A DNA stretch of 64,000 nucleotides, from positions 248,001-312,000 of the IMG/VR virus record IMGVR_UViG_3300023174_000033; one strand, written 5' to 3'. Made by a program: the position numbers and the translations under genes. Positions 5,443-60,060 of this stretch are shown piece after piece (position 1 is the first letter of the stretch; each line of letters opens with the position of its first letter). The notes under the pieces are model-generated. The model searched no databases. It saw only the letters and a program-made list of their open reading frames with translations, and was not told the DNA's origin.

Positions 5443-5949
5443 ATGATTAATAGTGCGCCAAAACAATCAACAAAATACAGACAGGGATTGTATGTCCCGA
5501 GGAATCTAAATAAAGTCATAAAGCTAAATTCCCAAGGTGGATTATATTATAGGTCTGGTCTTGAACAAAAAATGATGGTATACCTTGATTCCAACGAGAA
5601 TATAATATTTTGGGGAGCAGAACACTTAAGAGTTCCATATGTAAAAACTGAATGGGTTTCTGAAACTCAGGAATTTAAAACAACTGAACACGGATATTAT
5701 CCAGACTTTTATTATGAGTTGAAACGAAGTGATGGGTCAGTATCAAGGGTGGTTGCAGAAGTAAAGCCACATTCAGAAACTATTGAACCAAAACTTCAAG
5801 AAAAACCAACCTCAAAGCAACTCAAAAACTTTGAGTATGCTTTGAAGATGTATAACAAAAATCTTAGTAAATGGAAAGCTATGATTGAATATTGTGAAAG
5901 AAAAGGTTTTGAGTTTATAATTATAACAGAACAACACCTCAAATATTAA
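5443..5949 (+). CDS. Head completion nuclease (T4 gp4-like, TnsA-type PD-(D/E)xK fold)
   Basis: YRSGLE, WGAE, YYPDF, EVKP, NLSKWKA, FIIITE motifs. Confidence 0.85.
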   Translation: MINSAPKQSTKYRQGLYVPRNLNKVIKLNSQGGLYYRSGLEQKMMVYLDSNENIIFWGAEHLRVPYVKTEWVSETQEFKTTEHGYYPDFYYELKRSDGSVSRVVAEVKPHSETIEPKLQEKPTSKQLKNFEYALKMYNKNLSKWKAMIEYCERKGFEFIIITEQHLKY

Positions 5950-6311
5950 ATTGAGTGTAGCCCCATTCCATCATTTGACGATTCAATTGAAATCAATCTA
6001 ATTTGATGATCATTATCCCCTTTCTTTTTATAGAGTTCATTGAATCCCTTTGCTAGTCCACGCTTGAATACCTCTGTGAAATACGCAAAAGCATTATGAG
6101 ACTTTTCTTCATTGAAGTTGTACCAATTAGAAAACATATCCAAGAGGCCCGATTGATAACAATCCATGCGATCATCATTGTTATAATACCTCATTTTTTT
6201 GATTGTCCTCTTTGCTAAAACCTCAAGCATTGACTTGGTCTTATTTGTTAATTTTCCTTGTGCCTTGGAAATAATTATTTCCATATAAAGGTCCTTGTTT
6301 GAAAGATAAAT
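5946..6311 (-). CDS. Late-transcription sigma factor (T4 gp55-like); probable ATT start at 6311 (first ATG at 6284)
   Basis: DCYQSGLLD...NFNEEKSHNAFAYFTEV matches the gp55 core; the gp55-like YLSNKDLY segment lies in frame upstream of the first ATG. Confidence 0.75.
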   Translation of the reverse strand: MYLSNKDLYMEIIISKAQGKLTNKTKSMLEVLAKRTIKKMRYYNNDDRMDCYQSGLLDMFSNWYNFNEEKSHNAFAYFTEVFKRGLAKGFNELYKKKGDNDHQIRLISIESSNDGMGLHSI

Positions 6312-6400
6312 AACTTTAAAATAATTTTTATTTTTGAATAAATTTCAATAAAAACGAATTATGTTTTTTATATATCATTATATTATTTTGTTTAAAATAA

Positions 6401-6422
6401 AAAACCCTCCGAAGAGGGTTTT
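6401..6422 (-). terminator. Intrinsic terminator
   Basis: aaaaccctc-cgaa-gagggtttt; TTCG loop and U tract on the minus strand, directly after the 429-aa ORF. Confidence 0.85.
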
Positions 6423-6426
6423 AAAA

Positions 6427-7716
6427 TTATAGTCTTTCTTTTTCTCTTTCTTTATATTGAAGTTCTCTAATTGCTAAAATTTCCTCTTCTAAAGTATCTT
6501 TTCTCTTTCTTAAATTTCCTAATGCGATTGCTAATGAGTTTGATTCTCCAATCATTTTCATAGAACTTTCAATTTTGTGGATATTTAATTCAACATCTTC
6601 TAATTTCAAAGTAATTTCTCTTTCCTTGTCTTCTAATTTCCTCTTTGTAATTAATTCCTTACTTAAATTATTTTCATAAAAATAAGTAAGGTCGTAGTTT
6701 AATTCATTTCTTACTTCATTTACTAATTCCAATGCTGACTCATATTTGAAGAATGAATTGCCATATCTCTCATCACATCTGTAAAGATAAATAGCATTCT
6801 TATAATTAAATGCAAAAACCTCAAGATGTGGGTTAATCAAGTTAGATACTCTTTTAACAACATCCATCTCAACTAATTTGTTCAAATTATTTGAAGTCTC
6901 AAGTAAGATAGGATAAAAATTCTTGTTTACAATTGGAATGATTGGTGATGCAAATAAACTTTCAAGTGTAGTTTCTTTGTTCATTTCATCGTCATTGATA
7001 AAAAGAATACCCTTTTTCTTGGTAGAAAGTCCGATAGTAAGATTTTCAGAAATTCTGAAGTTAATTCTATCATCATCAATTGAAGCAAAACGCATTCCAA
7101 CTTCAAGATTTCTAAGAGTTCTTAATTTCTCTTGATCTTTCACATGATTTTCTAAAAGTGTTTTTTCAATATTATTTTCTGTTAAAATAAACCATGAATC
7201 TCTAACTAAACAGCAATAACCATCTTCAACCTGCTCAACAATTGTATAAACCGATTCAGATTTCCCACCAGATAATAGATTAGTTTTCTTTTCTGGTGAT
7301 TTGATAAGATTGTGTACAAATAATTTTATTTCTGGTACCCAGTCATAAATCGCTAATTCATTAAGAATTTTTGACATTCTATCTTGATCTGACTCTAAAT
7401 TAATAGTCTGTAGAAGCACATTAATAGGTTGTCTGTAAATCTGTCCTTGATTTTTACTATCTAAAATGTTGTATAAATGTTTTAATTCATAAAGTAATTG
7501 ATATTCTTTTAGATCATCATTTAATGACTCGAGTAAAAATCTTACGGATTTATCGAATGTATATGTCTTCAATGTTTCATTTAATGAGTGAATTACCTCT
7601 TTTTCTGAGGAAGAGTTTAAAGCATTGATGTGGCCTTCTACTATAGCAGAAACCTGGATATCTTCAACAGATAGGTTTTTTCTGAAGTTGAAAAGCTCTA
7701 ATTTGAGATTCTTCAT
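6427..7716 (-). CDS. Hypothetical protein with C-terminal coiled coil (probably virion or morphogenesis)
   Basis: 429-aa ORF with its own late-type promoter and terminator. Confidence 0.7.
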   Translation of the reverse strand: MKNLKLELFNFRKNLSVEDIQVSAIVEGHINALNSSSEKEVIHSLNETLKTYTFDKSVRFLLESLNDDLKEYQLLYELKHLYNILDSKNQGQIYRQPINVLLQTINLESDQDRMSKILNELAIYDWVPEIKLFVHNLIKSPEKKTNLLSGGKSESVYTIVEQVEDGYCCLVRDSWFILTENNIEKTLLENHVKDQEKLRTLRNLEVGMRFASIDDDRINFRISENLTIGLSTKKKGILFINDDEMNKETTLESLFASPIIPIVNKNFYPILLETSNNLNKLVEMDVVKRVSNLINPHLEVFAFNYKNAIYLYRCDERYGNSFFKYESALELVNEVRNELNYDLTYFYENNLSKELITKRKLEDKEREITLKLEDVELNIHKIESSMKMIGESNSLAIALGNLRKRKDTLEEEILAIRELQYKEREKERL

Positions 7717-45000: not shown

Positions 45001-48000
45001 CATGTTATACCAATTTAGACTTGGAACACTTGATTCAAAAGTCGGAACGCTTGTAAAATTACTTTTTGACCAAACACTAAATTTTCTATTAGTGGCTCCC
45101 GCACCATATGTCACATAAAAATCACCGTTATCCGTATTAACTTCGCAAGCATGTGGGGAAGCGGAGAAAGTGAATGTATATTCTAATTTCGGTATGTATG
45201 GGTCAACAACATAAGCTCTGTGTACTGTAGCAGCTGGTAATGCACTTTGGGATGAACTTATACAATAAAGAAAGTTATTTACGGGATTAAATACCATAAA
45301 TTTTGGTTGACCAGAAAATGGTAATATAACTTGATCTATAAAATCATTAGTTCTTGAATCATAAGCGATCAATCTACTATCACTTGGTAAACTTACTGAT
45401 GTTCCTGATAAAACATAAATTCTATTTGCAGAATTTAAATACGTTATATCAACAAAGTGGTCAAAATCATATGACGCGGCACTCGGGTGATTTGGTCTAC
45501 CGACATAACTCATTGTATAACTATTTGAGGCTCCGAATTGTATCCTGAATGAACTAGCAAAAGAAGACTTTGCGAAATCTCCTGGACTTGCGGGTTTTGG
45601 AACACTTGGAGTACAACTCAAAACATTAAAACCAGCACCAAAACCTAATGTTGAAAATGGAGCTACATCACAATATGGAGTAGTTGTTGGCCAAAATGGA
45701 CCTTGATAACTCAAATTCATAGATTGTGAACCCAAAAATTCAATATTATACTCATTATTATTATAAGGTCTAGTTGAATTATTTATAGTCACTAATTGTC
45801 CAGTAGCGAACCCATCAATTTCAAAATTAAATTTATTATTATTTGATAAAACCACAGAGTTTGAAGTTATCAAACATCCTAAATTGCCAGGTATGCATTT
45901 CTTTATTTCAAATGATGGTAGTCCTGGTAGTGAAATTATACCAGTTTTTACCGAAATTTCAAACCTTTGGTCTTGTTCTTTTACACTAAAAATTAACATA
46001 GAAAGATTACTTGTCACGATAATATCATATCCTGCTAATTTTTCCGACCAGTTCCTGACAAAATTTATTAATGTAGTATTAAAATCTACCTTACCCGATT
46101 TATAAGTCACATCTTGTCTATATTCAAAATCATTTAGTAATATAGAAAAACTAGAACTCAAATTATAAAGAAGTACTTTGGTGTGTAAAATTGAAAAATT
46201 AGCAGTTGTGCCAACTCTCACACTAAAAACCAAAGGTACATTTGGATACTCTGTTTTAAAGGATATTGTATTTCTGAAAATTGAATAACCTTTACCCGTG
46301 TATTCAAGTGTTGTTACTATACCTAAATTTGCTATTGGTACATACCATTTTGTTAACCAATTTTCTAGAGTTCTATTTATTGTAGAATCCATGTTAACAT
46401 TTATTCCATCATAAATAAATTCAACATCTTCATAATATATTTGACCATTCAAAGTTATTTCAATTCCAAATTCATCAATATCGGTAAAAACAATATCATA
46501 TCGTTTATTTTCTGAAAAATCTCTATTAAGTTCAGTCGTTAGATTTTCTACAATCTCAATGTTTGATTCACTAATATCAATTATTTCAGCAGATGGGGCT
46601 ATTAGTTGGGTGCTAGTAGTTGGTGTTTCCAAATAATATTCAACTTTAGCATATTCCTCTGGATAAATTAAGTCACAATAAATTTTATTATTATTGTAAT
46701 AATAATTAATATTCAAACTTTTTAGTTCAGGTGCGTATCTATCAATTGAAGAACCGAATGTAAAATCAACACTTTGTGTATAAGGTTGTGGATAAACAAA
46801 ATAATTGTTAATCAGTTGTACTTCACCTGTAAAAAAAGGTTGATCAACAATTGATTCAACAATTGGTAATGTTGTAGATTCTTTCCAAAATCCTGTGTTA
46901 TCTGGAAAAATTGAAGCAGTTGCCGTCCAAGTGTATTGTGTGGTACATTCGTATATAATATTATTATAAATGGTTAAGAAACCCACTGGTATGTCTGTTT
47001 TGGGTTTCACAGGTTGGTTCCAAGTTGAGTAAGTAGATGATACACCTATTGAATTCCAGTTTGGAATATTATCTATTGTTAAAAAATTACTGTTTAAACC
47101 TGGTGACGCATTAACCACACTAAACCTAATACCAGGTTTTAATATCCTTGGAATTCCACCCTGCAACTGAATTGTTTTTGTTGCTTGGAAAAATTGTAAT
47201 CCTCCAGTATATACAGTTGGTAAATCTGTCAATAAAGTTACTCTTAATGTAAAAGTGGTATTTGGAAGAATAGATATAGGGTTCAGTGTATACCTTTTAT
47301 AAACTCTGTCCGGTAGAGAAACAGGATTACCAAAAGTGTCCTTTGGAATATTAACTGATACAATCTTATTATTCTTCTCTGAATTTATTATATTTAATTT
47401 TCTGTCGTTATAATATTTTCTATAAAATTGTGGTTCCGACCAAGAAGAAAGGTTATCTTTACTACCACTTCTGTAATTATAAATGCCGATAGAATTTACA
47501 CCAGATATGAAAAAAGTATTAATAAAAGTTATGTCAAATAATCCCGCTAAATTGTTTTTTGTGTCAGCCAATAACATTATAGCATTCTTTTTTGTTTTAT
47601 GTACATTATAAGTCTTATTAGGTGAGAAATCGGTGAATGCTGTTGAGAATCTAACCTGAGACCCTATTGGAAATATTGTATCAAAATTATCTCCATAAAT
47701 CCACCTTGATGATAATTTTGGATCTGAATTTGGCACCTCATAATTTGTTATAGAAAAAGTAGAGGAAGTAGCTCCATAGAAATTAATCCCAAATTCATTG
47801 AATAATTGAAATTTATCCAATGATAGTGTAACACCAGGTGCATAAGCAAAACCTGGTATTTTCTCTAAAACATAAAGTCCTATTGTTTTGTGAGTATCAT
47901 CACTATTTTCGTGGAAGATTAAATCACCTTCCCAAATTTTATCAGTTTCGCTCCATCTAAAATTTAAACTATCCCCCTCTTTATTAAAGAAAATTAATGA

Positions 48001-58874: not shown

Positions 58875-58903
58875 AAAAAAACCCACCATTGGTGGGTTTT
58901 TTT
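58875..58903. terminator. Bidirectional intrinsic terminator
   Basis: aaaaaaacccacc-att-ggtgggttttttt between convergent genes. Confidence 0.85.
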
Positions 58904-59150
58904 ATTTGAATTTGTTTGCCATACCTGACATTTGGTTCATATAAGATCCAGGATTGAAGTTTGGCATTTTTTGCATTCCTTCTTCCTTTTTCTGACGTTT
59001 CTCCTCTTCTTCAGTTAATTCATTGACAATTCGGATGTTTTCCTCCATCATCCAATAAGGCCACTCATTCATAGCGGCCTCTTGAAGATGATAGTTCTTT
59101 TGTAATAGTAGTTTATTCTTTAATAAACTGCTCAAATGCGTCATGAACAA
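58902..59150 (-). CDS. gp51-like hub/tail assembly protein; possibly expressed as a frameshift extension of the upstream ORF
   Basis: LLLQKNYH...MNEWPYWMME...EEEEKRQ pattern; overlaps the gp26-like ORF in the +1 frame. Confidence 0.6.
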   Translation of the reverse strand: MFMTHLSSLLKNKLLLQKNYHLQEAAMNEWPYWMMEENIRIVNELTEEEEKRQKKEEGMQKMPNFNPGSYMNQMSGMANKFK

Positions 59151-60060
59151 CGAAAACAGCTGACGGTCCGTCGGGAAATATCATATCTGTGTGGATCTCT
59201 AGACCACACTGACATTGACTTTGCAGTTTCTCAATACCGAATGTAAGCTTCTCAACTGCAGAATTTAGGAATTGAAATGGAATATCCTCCATTTTTTGGA
59301 ATTCATCCAACTTTGATTTTATACCTTCAATAGTAATTGAATTACGGTCAGGTAACATGAAAGGAATAATTTTCAAGAAAGAAAGATTTGGTTTTCTTTT
59401 TTCAGCATTTTCCTTTACAATGTAATCAGTGAAAGACTTCTGAACACCAATAGTAGGTGGTGCCAAGTTGAACACTTGACCAGTTTTAATTTGGAATCTA
59501 AATGAAACTGAAGCAGGATCAAAAAATTCCATCACTCTTTCGGCTGGTTGGAAGAATTTGAAATTTTCCCTTTTCAGCTCAATCGCTACTTCGTTTCCAC
59601 AGGAACAATTAACCTTTGTAGTAAGTACAGAACCTTTTTGGAAAGTCAATTCTCTGATTAGGAAAATTAGATAATAACGATCAGGATCTCTCAAATCTAA
59701 ATATGAACCAATTGTGCCATCCAAGTGTTTAATTCTAACACAAGATGATAACATATCATTCATTTTCTCAACGATATCATAGAAGTTGTTATCATCAACC
59801 ATTGAATAAGCCTGAATTTCTTTTACTTGGGCTGCCCTAACTTGGATTGTTGAACCAGGAGGGTAAAGTAATCCACAAGGAAATTCCCTAACATCAAAAG
59901 CAAAATAATGCAAATCACTTGTTCTTGATTGTTCAATGTTATTTAGTGGTGTTTTTGGTGCTACTGGAGCTTCCATCGTTGGTTTATTTTGTTCAAGTCC
60001 TTCGAGGTGGCGTCTGAGATATTCTTCCTCACTCATGTTATTTTCTTGTTCTTTTGACAT
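59113..60060 (-). CDS. Baseplate hub assembly protein / tail assembly chaperone (T4 gp26-like)
   Basis: FPCGLLYP, VRAAQVKE, DRYYLIFLIRELTF, CSCG and CQCG Zn motifs, PPTIG. Confidence 0.7.
   Translation of the reverse strand: MSKEQENNMSEEEYLRRHLEGLEQNKPTMEAPVAPKTPLNNIEQSRTSDLHYFAFDVREFPCGLLYPPGSTIQVRAAQVKEIQAYSMVDDNNFYDIVEKMNDMLSSCVRIKHLDGTIGSYLDLRDPDRYYLIFLIRELTFQKGSVLTTKVNCSCGNEVAIELKRENFKFFQPAERVMEFFDPASVSFRFQIKTGQVFNLAPPTIGVQKSFTDYIVKENAEKRKPNLSFLKIIPFMLPDRNSITIEGIKSKLDEFQKMEDIPFQFLNSAVEKLTFGIEKLQSQCQCGLEIHTDMIFPDGPSAVFVVHDAFEQFIKE

What the first reader, a model, noticed from the sequence alone, without database searches (positions are those of the whole stretch)
6284..6345. Late sigma factor appears to start at a non-canonical ATT codon
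Seen: upstream of the first ATG the frame reads TGA-...-AAA GTT ATT TAT CTT TCA AAC AAG GAC CTT TAT ATG, with no ATG/GTG/TTG after the in-frame TGA. The encoded YLSNKDLY resembles the conserved N-terminal YVNNKEL motif of gp55, and ATT (6309-6311) directly precedes it after an A-rich tract. Known: AUU starts (infC, pcnB) are inefficient and IF3-sensitive. Inference: the late-transcription switch is translationally throttled or coupled to IF3 availability.
Basis: partly seen in the sequence, partly recalled or inferred. Interest (0 to 1): 0.6.

Follow-up and report, generated by a model that had tools for sequence, protein, structure and literature searches.

The report
Phage late sigma gene starting at ATT
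A huge phage's gene for the sigma factor that switches on late genes most likely begins at a weak ATT codon, and about half of its relatives also use ATT or ATC there, which points to a built-in brake on the late switch and explains why gene callers mis-place this gene's start.

Summary
On the minus strand, a gp55-like late sigma gene is open from an in-frame TGA (6347-6345) to its stop (5948-5946). No ATG, GTG or TTG lies before the ATG at 6284. ATT (6311-6309) directly precedes the conserved YLSNKDLY.

In 80 relatives from viral metagenomes, the codon at that position is ATG in 35, ATT in 23, ATC in 13 and GTG in 6. It is never ATA or any other Ile, Val or Leu codon. The other three relatives have an ATG one to three codons upstream.

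Within the ATT/ATC lineages, codons 2-26 are under strong purifying selection, but the in-frame triplets upstream are not. Most of these lineages have no Met at codon 10. Two have a stop one or two triplets before ATT.

Three other assemblies of the window's own strain or a near strain also read ATT, so it is not an assembly error. The ATT site has a good SD-less, A-rich initiation context; the ATG at 6284 has a poor one. Among 289 ortholog comparisons, this is the only gene with the problem.

ATT is therefore very probably the real start, giving a 121-aa protein. Weak, IF3-sensitive translation is a plausible but untested consequence. The phage does encode IF3, but IF3 presence does not track start-codon type.

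The parts
5946..6311 (-). Proposed full coding sequence of the gp55-like late sigma factor (121 aa plus TAA stop at 5948-5946), starting at ATT.
   Evidence: The table-11 ORF is listed. PHROG 234 'late sigma transcription factor' matches at E 8e-8. The AF2 model has pLDDT 83, and its best PDB match is T4 gp55 in the RNAP open complex, 7d7c_F. All relatives are 121-122 aa from the aligned codon.
6309..6311 (-). ATT, the proposed non-canonical start codon.
   Evidence: The aligned codon in 80 relatives is ATG 35, ATT 23, ATC 13, GTG 6, and never ATA. The context score is 5.2, at the 63rd percentile of the genome's predicted starts and the 99.5th percentile of internal ATGs. ATT is reproduced in three other assemblies.
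6285..6308 (-). Codons 2-9, YLSNKDLY, the conserved N-terminal motif and start of helix 1.
   Evidence: Y2, L3, N5 and L8 are invariant. Among 26 distinct ATT/ATC loci, pS is 0.86 and pN 0.097. The motif aligns to T4 gp55 residues 10-17. The model's helix 1 spans residues 5-18.
6282..6284 (-). ATG at codon 10: the start used by gene callers and a possible secondary start giving a 112-aa product.
   Evidence: This is the first canonical start in the frame. Its context score is -2.65, at the 3rd percentile of predicted starts. In relatives this codon is Val, Ile, Ala or Ser in most. It is Met only in loci whose first codon is ATT or GTG: 14 of 44, against 0 of 37 ATG loci.
6345..6347 (-). In-frame TGA that closes the frame upstream.
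   Evidence: Seen. Further in-frame stops at 6377-6375 and 6380-6378 mean that recoding TGA would not reach an ATG (read).
6321..6335 (-). A-rich tract of the initiation region. In relatives it reads AAAAAATAAT and ends 10 nt before the start.
   Evidence: The genome-wide start model is A-rich and G-poor with no Shine-Dalgarno signal. The spacer between this motif and the start is exactly 10 nt in 22 of 24 distinct ATT/ATC loci, but 6-11 nt in ATG loci.
6334..6348 (-). Small leader hairpin (TTGAA-loop-TTCAA). Its 5' arm contains a TTG that is out of frame with the gene in the window.
   Evidence: The hairpin appears in the MFE fold. The stem is kept by compensating changes in L007 and L008, read by eye. 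That TTG is in frame in L007-L009 but shifted by a 1-nt indel in the window. This shows that the stretch is not coding.
6392..6422 (-). Intrinsic terminator of the upstream 429-aa gene (6427-7716), so the sigma gene has its own leader.
   Evidence: The terminator scan finds a 9-bp stem plus a T tail, against 0.1 expected by chance.

Best explanation
The window comes from a 464.6-kb huge phage of the Mahaphage kind, whose genes use SD-less, A-rich initiation regions as in Bacteroidota.

Shown by comparison: its gp55-like late sigma factor is a 121-aa protein whose translation begins at AUU (6311-6309). The initiator tRNA would read this near-cognate codon, giving M-YLSNKDLY... This is the ancestral N-terminus of the clade. 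About half the relatives have AUG or GUG at this codon, and the other half have AUU or AUC. The two forms have replaced each other several times, at least once by recombination of a short cassette carrying the initiation region and the start codon.

Inferred: AUU/AUC makes initiation inefficient and dependent on the stringency of IF3. This keeps the late sigma factor scarce or delays it. Because the phage carries its own IF3 and bS21, the level could be tied to the state of the initiation machinery during infection.

Inferred: in the window's lineage, an AUG that arose at codon 10 may add a second, 9-residue-shorter product.
For: 1. Codon spectrum. At the aligned site the codon is ATG 35, ATT 23, ATC 13 and GTG 6. 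ATA makes up 36% of Ile codons in the genome and 29% in this gene family, yet it never occurs here. GTG is only 12% of Val codons, yet it is the only Val codon seen here.

2. Selection boundary. Within ATT/ATC loci, codons 2-9 have pS 0.86 and pN 0.10, and codons 10-26 have pS 0.75 and pN 0.13. The 12 upstream in-frame triplets have pS 0.44 and pN 0.43.

3. No alternative start. 29 of 37 ATT/ATC loci lack Met at codon 10, and their next ATG is at codon 28. L015 and L022 have an in-frame stop one to two triplets before ATT. Upstream ATG or TTG codons fall in varying frames.

4. Context. ATT 6311 scores like a genuine start and ATG 6284 like an internal Met. ATT/ATC loci have a fixed 10-nt spacer and U at -1 in 22 of 24.

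5. Specificity. In 289 ortholog N-terminus comparisons with three relatives' genomes, sigma is the only gene with a conserved extension lacking a canonical start, apart from one overlap artefact and one split gene.

6. Not an error. The same ATT and spacing occur in three other assemblies and in 36 independent metagenome contigs.

7. Persistence and exchange. The best tree needs 9 changes between the canonical and the ATT/ATC state, and well-supported branches alone force at least 3 changes for each codon group. L070 is a mosaic in which only -20..+60 comes from an ATC lineage.

8. Structure. Residues 1-10 are confidently modelled and helix 1 starts at residue 5.

9. Precedent. IF3 represses the non-canonical GTC start of Streptomyces sigR (PMC5472188).

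10. Toolkit. The phage encodes a full-length IF3 and bS21.
Against: There is no direct evidence of initiation: no N-terminal peptide, ribosome profiling or reporter assay.

The window has a canonical ATG only 9 codons downstream, which could capture most initiation. Met at that codon occurs only in lineages with a weak first codon, which hints that it compensates.

How strongly Bacteroidota-type ribosomes and IF3 discriminate against AUU/AUC is not known to me.

IF3 presence does not follow start-codon type in the three near-complete genomes checked.

The number of independent origins of ATT/ATC is uncertain. The gene tree is poorly resolved (13 of 52 branches well supported) and recombination moves the cassette.
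Confidence: 0.72

Rival explanations
1. Translation starts only at ATG 6284. The nine codons upstream are a relic of a recently lost ATG start, and the working protein is 112 aa.
For: ATG 6284 is the first canonical start and the one that public gene calls use for this exact sequence. Met at codon 10 is found only where the first codon is ATT or GTG, as expected if it took over as the start.
Against: The window's closest clade (L008, L009) keeps ATT/ATC without Met at codon 10, so ATT predates the ATG. Codons 2-9 remain under purifying selection in ATT/ATC lineages. The window and L007 differ there by two synonymous changes only. The context of ATG 6284 is at the 3rd percentile of starts. A 112-aa product would lose invariant Y2, L3, N5 and L8 and the first turn and a half of helix 1.
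Confidence: 0.13
2. Translation starts further upstream, at the TTG in the leader hairpin (6348-6346) through a frameshift or indel, or by re-initiation after a short upstream ORF.
For: In L007-L009 that TTG is in frame, and gene callers produced 133-aa models from it. In L028 and L031-L033 an upstream ATG is in frame. Open frames upstream are longer in ATT/ATC loci than in ATG loci.
Against: In the window the TTG is out of frame because of a 1-nt indel, and this is reproduced in three other assemblies. Upstream triplets show pN about equal to pS. The TTG sits in a hairpin stem kept by compensating changes (read). The upstream ATG falls in frames 0, 1 or 2, and its ORF ends anywhere from 48 nt before the start to 10 nt after it. 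L015 and L022 have in-frame stops just before ATT. The longer open frames follow from the fixed 10-nt spacer, which puts the TAA of the A-rich motif out of frame.
Confidence: 0.04
3. ATT is a sequencing or assembly error for ATG.
For: None beyond the prior rarity of ATT starts.
Against: The same ATT occurs in four assemblies of this or a near strain. ATT or ATC occurs in 36 other contigs from many metagenomes.
Confidence: 0.01

Closest known systems
T4 gp55 (late sigma factor) family, PHROG 234
   Same: It is a small single-domain sigma with a region-2-like helical fold. Its best structural match is gp55 in the RNAP open complex (7d7c_F). It shares the N-terminal Y-[VL]-x-N-K-[DE]-L motif and is collinear with gp55. 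It sits among structural genes such as the portal and head closure genes.
   Different: It is 121 aa against 185 aa and lacks gp55's 9-residue N-terminal lead and its C-terminal part. Pairwise sequence similarity is weak (E 0.005). T4 gene 55 and the more distant homologs checked (Lak-C1, PAU, pT24, MA9V-1) have a canonical in-frame start.
Streptomyces sigR with a GTC start codon repressed by IF3 (Feeney et al. 2017, PMC5472188)
   Same: Both are sigma factor genes whose output would be set by a non-canonical start codon. In sigR, changing it to a canonical codon overproduces the sigma factor, and IF3 mutants relieve the repression.
   Different: The sigR case is shown experimentally in a bacterial chromosome with an SD-using system, and its codon is conserved across the genus. 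Here the gene is viral, the codon is AUU/AUC, the initiation region is SD-less, nothing is measured, and the codon flips to AUG in about half the relatives.
E. coli infC and pcnB AUU start codons (own knowledge; pcnB: PMC2939334)
   Same: AUU is the initiation codon of a dosage-sensitive regulator. It is discriminated against by IF3, which makes output sensitive to IF3 level.
   Different: infC is autoregulatory because it encodes IF3 itself. Here the AUU gene is a sigma factor and the IF3 gene lies elsewhere in the phage genome and starts with ATG. No feedback loop is shown.
SD-independent initiation of Bacteroidia (Baez et al. 2019, PMC6847099; McNutt et al. 2023, PMC9976891)
   Same: The genome's start contexts are A-rich and G-poor with no SD. 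This matches the described reliance on upstream adenines, low secondary structure and the absence of nearby AUGs (PMC9976891).
   Different: Those studies concern AUG starts. ATT/ATC loci here carry an unusual C/G-containing hexamer at -6 to -1 (consensus A-C-G-G/C-C-U) and a fixed spacer, neither of which is part of the described code.

Membership tests
gp55-like phage late sigma factors (PHROG 234) | Significant match to the family profile | tested here: met
   phrog_234 'late sigma transcription factor' matches at E 7.8e-8 for the 112-aa form and 6.1e-7 for the extended form. Pfam Sigma70_r2 gives only a sub-threshold match (E 0.03).
gp55-like phage late sigma factors (PHROG 234) | Sigma region-2-like helical fold resembling gp55 | tested here: met
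   The AF2 model has pLDDT 83.4 and pTM 0.81, with four long helices. The Foldseek top hit is 7d7c_F, T4 gp55 in the RNAP-promoter open complex (E 6.4e-3, TMq 0.65). The next hits are region 2 of sigma-32, sigma-E and WhiG. The E-value is modest.
gp55-like phage late sigma factors (PHROG 234) | N-terminal Y-[VL]-x-N-K-[DE]-L motif collinear with gp55 | tested here: met
   hhalign places the window's residues 2-81 on gp55 residues 10-101. The motif is invariant or nearly so in 27 relatives.
gp55-like phage late sigma factors (PHROG 234) | Directs host RNAP to late promoters, with gp33-like and clamp co-activators | not tested
   I did not search for late promoter motifs or for gp33/gp45 homologs.
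Genes with a functional non-canonical (AUU-class) start codon under IF3 control (infC, pcnB, sigR type) | Conserved coding sequence extends upstream of the first canonical start, and a near-cognate codon sits at the homologous start position | tested here: met
Genes with a functional non-canonical (AUU-class) start codon under IF3 control (infC, pcnB, sigR type) | The non-canonical codon is maintained in relatives | tested here: met
   ATT or ATC is present in 36 of 80 relatives, including whole clades. Unlike infC or sigR, it alternates with ATG.
Genes with a functional non-canonical (AUU-class) start codon under IF3 control (infC, pcnB, sigR type) | The protein N-terminus maps to the non-canonical codon | not testable with these tools
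   This needs proteomics or initiation-site ribosome profiling.
Genes with a functional non-canonical (AUU-class) start codon under IF3 control (infC, pcnB, sigR type) | Expression rises when the codon is changed to AUG or when IF3 stringency is lowered | not testable with these tools
   Only circumstantial evidence is available. The phage encodes IF3, but IF3 presence does not correlate with codon type.

The most novel reading that the evidence does not exclude
The strength of the late sigma factor's start codon is an evolvable, recombining timer module. One form is AUU/AUC in a precisely spaced, open initiation region. The other is AUG in a different initiation region. These circulate as alternative cassettes in a clade of huge phages. 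In the AUU/AUC form, the onset of late transcription is gated by IF3 stringency, which the phage itself can alter with its own IF3 and bS21.
Probability: 0.2. Interest if true: 0.8.

Novelty: new member of a known kind. Interest (0 to 1): 0.6.

Why it matters
It would matter in three ways.

1. Regulation. It would be a viral example of setting the dose or timing of a master transcription switch through start-codon choice. It occurs in a translation system without Shine-Dalgarno pairing, where the rules for near-cognate starts are unknown. The phage also carries its own IF3 and bS21, which makes the IF3 link directly testable.

2. Natural experiment. ATG, GTG, ATT and ATC alternate at one site, and the cassette moves by recombination. 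This offers a natural series of alleles for measuring start-codon strength in Bacteroidota-type initiation.

3. Annotation. Public gene calls for this single 90%-identity cluster have five different lengths (133, 112, 94, 82 and 73 aa), and none is the 121-aa form. This conserved phage marker gene is therefore systematically mis-annotated.

Tried and rejected
- **Reads check.** I did not try to reach reads another way. Independent public assemblies served instead.
- **Near-identical phage DNA.** Megablast of the region against GenBank phages found nothing.
- **TGA recoding.** Rejected: the frame upstream of the TGA meets TGA and TAA again with no ATG, and the genome's long ORFs are normal under table 11.
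- **SD-like AAGGA, 7 nt before ATG 6284.** Rejected as a ribosome-binding site, because the genome's start contexts are G-depleted with no SD signal.
- **Special initiator tRNA for AUU.** The genome has 7 tRNAs. Its tRNA-Met(CAU) has a paired G1-C72 and lacks the three G-C pairs in the anticodon stem, so it looks like an elongator.
- **IF3 correlation.** IF3 is present in the window's genome (ATT) and in a 508-kb relative (ATG). It is absent from a 95%-complete 385-kb relative (ATC). No pattern emerges.
- **'AUG in an occluded site versus AUU/AUC in an open site'.** Predicted opening energy of -15..+6 is higher for ATG loci (5.2 against 2.9 kcal/mol, p 0.0003). After shuffling the upstream leader, most of the difference proved intrinsic to the initiation region's composition (z-score difference p 0.09). 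This is suggestive only.
- **Met at codon 10 versus weak first codon.** Raw counts are 14/44 against 0/37, but too few independent pairs exist for a test.
- **Upstream ORF coupling.** The frames and end points of the upstream ATG's ORF vary, so coupling is not a conserved feature.
- **Rfam.** Only sub-threshold hits on the terminator hairpin.
- **PDB by sequence.** No match.
- **Large protein searches.** Not used, as the operators advised; the loci gave enough relatives.

Full report
**1. What is in the sequence**

The feature lies on the minus strand. The ORF that gene callers see runs from ATG 6284 to the TAA at 5948-5946 and encodes 112 aa. Upstream in the same frame there is a TGA at 6347-6345, followed by 20 sense codons. 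The first 11 are NLFKNKNYFKV. Then comes ATT (6311-6309), then YLSNKDLY (6308-6285).

None of these codons is ATG, GTG or TTG. With the full table-11 start set, the first start is ATT, which gives 121 aa. Reading TGA as sense does not help, because the frame meets TGA and TAA again further upstream with no ATG.

An intrinsic terminator at 6422-6392 ends the upstream 429-aa gene, so the sigma gene has its own leader. Its neighbours include the portal gene and a convergent head-closure gene.

**2. What the gene is**

The protein matches PHROG 234, 'late sigma transcription factor', at E 8e-8. An AlphaFold2 model of the 121-aa form is confident (pLDDT 83, pTM 0.81) and has helices at residues 5-18, 23-38, 45-61 and 74-96.

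Its best PDB match is T4 gp55 in the gp55-dependent RNAP open complex (7d7c_F, E 6e-3, TMq 0.65). Region-2 domains of other sigma factors follow.

T4 gp55 begins MSETKPKYNYVNNKELL. A profile alignment places the window's Y2 on gp55 Y10 and runs collinearly to residue 81.

**3. Where it comes from**

The window is positions 248001-312000 of a 464,605-bp virus record estimated at 98% complete, with 32% GC. The closest GenBank relatives of the sigma protein are the 462-735-kb uncultured huge phages of Al-Shayeb et al. 2020, followed by the Lak phages. That paper places its largest genomes and the Lak phages in the 'Mahaphage' clade, predicts Bacteroidetes hosts for the genomes over 634 kb and for the Lak phages, and notes phage-encoded IF1, IF3, S1 and S21 (PMC7162821).

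I built a start-site model from 458 long ORFs of this genome. It shows no Shine-Dalgarno signal. Upstream positions are A-rich and strongly G-depleted, with U favoured at -1. This matches the SD-independent initiation described for Bacteroidia (PMC9976891). The AAGGA that lies 7 nt before ATG 6284 is therefore not a credible ribosome-binding site.

**4. Comparative test of the start**

A scan of IMG/VR returned 80 relatives with 79-99% protein identity. I read the codon aligned to the window's ATT in each.

| Codon at the aligned site | Loci |
|---|---|
| ATG | 35 |
| ATT | 23 |
| ATC | 13 |
| GTG | 6 |
| Other, with an ATG one to three codons upstream | 3 |

No locus has ATA, although ATA is 36% of Ile codons in the genome and 29% within this gene family. 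The only Val codon seen is GTG, which is 12% of Val codons. The site therefore holds only codons that can initiate.

In most ATG loci an in-frame stop lies 0-5 codons upstream, which fixes the N-terminus as M-Y-L-x-N-K.

Among the ATT/ATC loci, most have no canonical in-frame start upstream. The exceptions are as follows.
- A TTG in L007-L009 lies in the stem of a small leader hairpin that is kept by compensating changes (read). In the window it is put out of frame by a 1-nt indel.
- An ATG in L028 and L031-L033 belongs to a conserved leader box. That ATG falls in all three frames across loci.

L015 and L022 have in-frame stops one and two triplets before ATT. Only 8 of the 37 ATT/ATC loci, the window included, have Met at codon 10. 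In the rest the next ATG is at codon 28.

**5. Where coding constraint begins**

I computed Nei-Gojobori proportions among 26 distinct ATT/ATC loci.

| Region | pS | pN |
|---|---|---|
| Codons 2-9 | 0.86 | 0.097 |
| Codons 10-26 | 0.75 | 0.13 |
| Codons 27-121 | 0.80 | 0.077 |
| 12 in-frame triplets upstream of the start | 0.44 | 0.43 |

The ATG/GTG loci give the same picture. The protein-level constraint therefore begins exactly at the ATT/ATC codon. Y2, L3, N5, L8 and E11 are invariant in 27 diverse sequences.

**6. Initiation context**

ATT 6311 scores 5.2 under the genome's start model. That is the 63rd percentile of predicted starts and the 99.5th percentile of internal ATGs. ATG 6284 scores -2.65, the 3rd percentile of starts.

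ATT/ATC loci share a tighter context than ATG loci.
- The spacer after the A-rich AAAAATAA motif is exactly 10 nt in 22 of 24 distinct loci, against 6-11 nt in ATG loci.
- U is at -1 in 22 of 24, against 11 of 20.
- A is at -6 in 21 of 24.
- A C/G-containing hexamer sits at -6 to -1.

The fixed spacer puts the motif's TAA out of frame. This explains why upstream open frames are longer in ATT/ATC loci without any need for upstream translation.

**7. Is it an error, and is it genome-wide?**

However, the exact 112-aa product is found on other public assemblies. Two assemblies are identical to the window over 420 nt, and a third differs at 12 of 420 positions. All three have ATT and the same A-run lengths.

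I also compared stop-to-stop frames of this genome with three relatives' contigs of 107, 204 and 385 kb. Of 289 ortholog pairs with N-terminal coverage, sigma is the only gene with a conserved extension that lacks a canonical start. The two other flags were a gene overlap and a split gene. The ATT start is therefore specific to this gene.

**8. Evolution**

A maximum-likelihood tree of 84 coding sequences, with the start codon excluded, needs 9 changes between canonical and ATT/ATC states. Well-supported branches alone force at least 3 changes for each codon group. The window's clade (the window plus L007, L008 and L009) is entirely ATT/ATC.

L070 is a mosaic. Positions -20 to +60 match an ATC lineage (1/20 and 3/60 differences). 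The leader upstream and the rest of the gene match an ATG lineage. At least some switches are therefore recombination of a short cassette carrying the initiation region and start codon. Mutational origins are thus fewer than the tree suggests. It also shows that both forms circulate and are interchangeable.

More distant homologs (Lak-C1, PAU, pT24, MA9V-1) have longer N-termini and a canonical in-frame start.

**9. Mechanism**

Shown: ATT is the homolog of the clade's start codon. The residues it precedes are translated in ATT/ATC lineages. No better start exists in most of them.

Inferred from established knowledge: AUU and AUC are weak, IF3-discriminated start codons in E. coli infC and pcnB. 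A non-canonical GTC start puts Streptomyces sigR under IF3 repression (PMC5472188). By analogy, the late sigma factor would be translated inefficiently and in an IF3-sensitive way.

The phage encodes a full-length IF3 with both N and C domains and a bS21 homolog. It has no IF1 and no initiator-like tRNA. IF3 is present in an ATG-type relative and absent from a 95%-complete ATC-type relative. The link to phage IF3 therefore remains a hypothesis.

In the window and L007, the ATG at codon 10 is derived, because the sister loci L008 and L009 have GTT there. It may give a second, shorter product. Met at that codon is seen only with ATT or GTG first codons (14/44 against 0/37), but the test lacks power.

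**10. What did not hold up**

ATG-type leaders often pair the region just before the start with a box further upstream. Their predicted opening energy is higher than in ATT/ATC leaders. A shuffle control shows that most of this difference is intrinsic to the initiation region's composition. I therefore report it only as a lead.

**11. Verdict**

The throttle and IF3 interpretation is plausible but untested. This is a new member of a known kind (regulators with non-canonical start codons), in an unusual setting: a huge phage with SD-less initiation and its own IF3. It also has a direct annotation consequence, because public gene calls for this cluster have five different lengths and none is 121 aa.

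Noticed in passing
Relatives L010, L016, L017, L026, L043, L062, L065, L068 and others, 42-69 nt upstream of the start; degenerate in the window around 6355-6375 (-): A 13-nt box, TATAACATGAAAG, is conserved in the sigma leader of many relatives even though synonymous sites are saturated. It occurs only once per genome in G001 and G005 and is absent from G000 and G004, so it is specific to this leader and not a general promoter. It often pairs with an upstream complement (TTCATGTTA...) or with the region just before the start. Its function is unknown.
   Followed up: partly
Positions -6 to -1 before the start in ATT/ATC loci (window 6317-6312, AAAGTT): ATT/ATC loci share a C/G-containing hexamer (consensus A-C-G-G/C-C-U) and a fixed 10-nt spacer after the A-rich motif. 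This differs from the genome's general G-poor start context. I could find no pairing partner or explanation.
   Followed up: partly
L070 (-20 to +60 relative to the start) compared with L065 and L068: There is a short recombination tract of about 80 nt. It carries the initiation region, the ATC start and the first 20 codons from one lineage into the leader and gene body of an ATG lineage.
   Followed up: yes
Own genome outside the window: G000:C1:386322-386852 (-) and 133276-133413 (+); tRNAs at 46112, 122154, 123126, 222412, 222562, 427193 and 427324: The phage encodes a full-length IF3 (176 aa, ATG start), a bS21 homolog and 7 tRNAs (Trp, Cys, Arg-UCU, Gln, Glu, Ile-UAU and an elongator-like Met-CAU). 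No IF1 was found.
   Followed up: partly
Protein cluster of window 5949-6284 (-) in the public collection: Gene callers gave this one 90%-identity cluster products of 133, 112, 94, 82 and 73 aa, and none of 121 aa. The start of this gene is called inconsistently across databases.
   Followed up: yes
L126 (Prevotella phage Lak-C1 homolog): The Lak-C1 sigma homolog has several in-frame TAG codons within conserved sequence (for example Y-V-TAG-N-K-E-L). This fits the stop-codon recoding reported for Lak phages. The window's genome shows no such recoding.
   Followed up: no
window 58902-59150 (-) and 59113-60060 (-): An 82-aa ORF overlaps the last 38 nt of the preceding 315-aa gene in another frame. 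Its frame is conserved upstream of its first canonical start in two relatives, most simply because the overlapped C-terminus is conserved. I did not examine a frameshift product.
   Followed up: partly
window 5443-5949 (+): This convergent neighbour overlaps the sigma stop codon by 4 nt. It is called 'head closure' by PHROGs (E 1e-31), but the contig look-up lists Pfam Tn7_TnsA-like_N for the same product. The annotations conflict.
   Followed up: no
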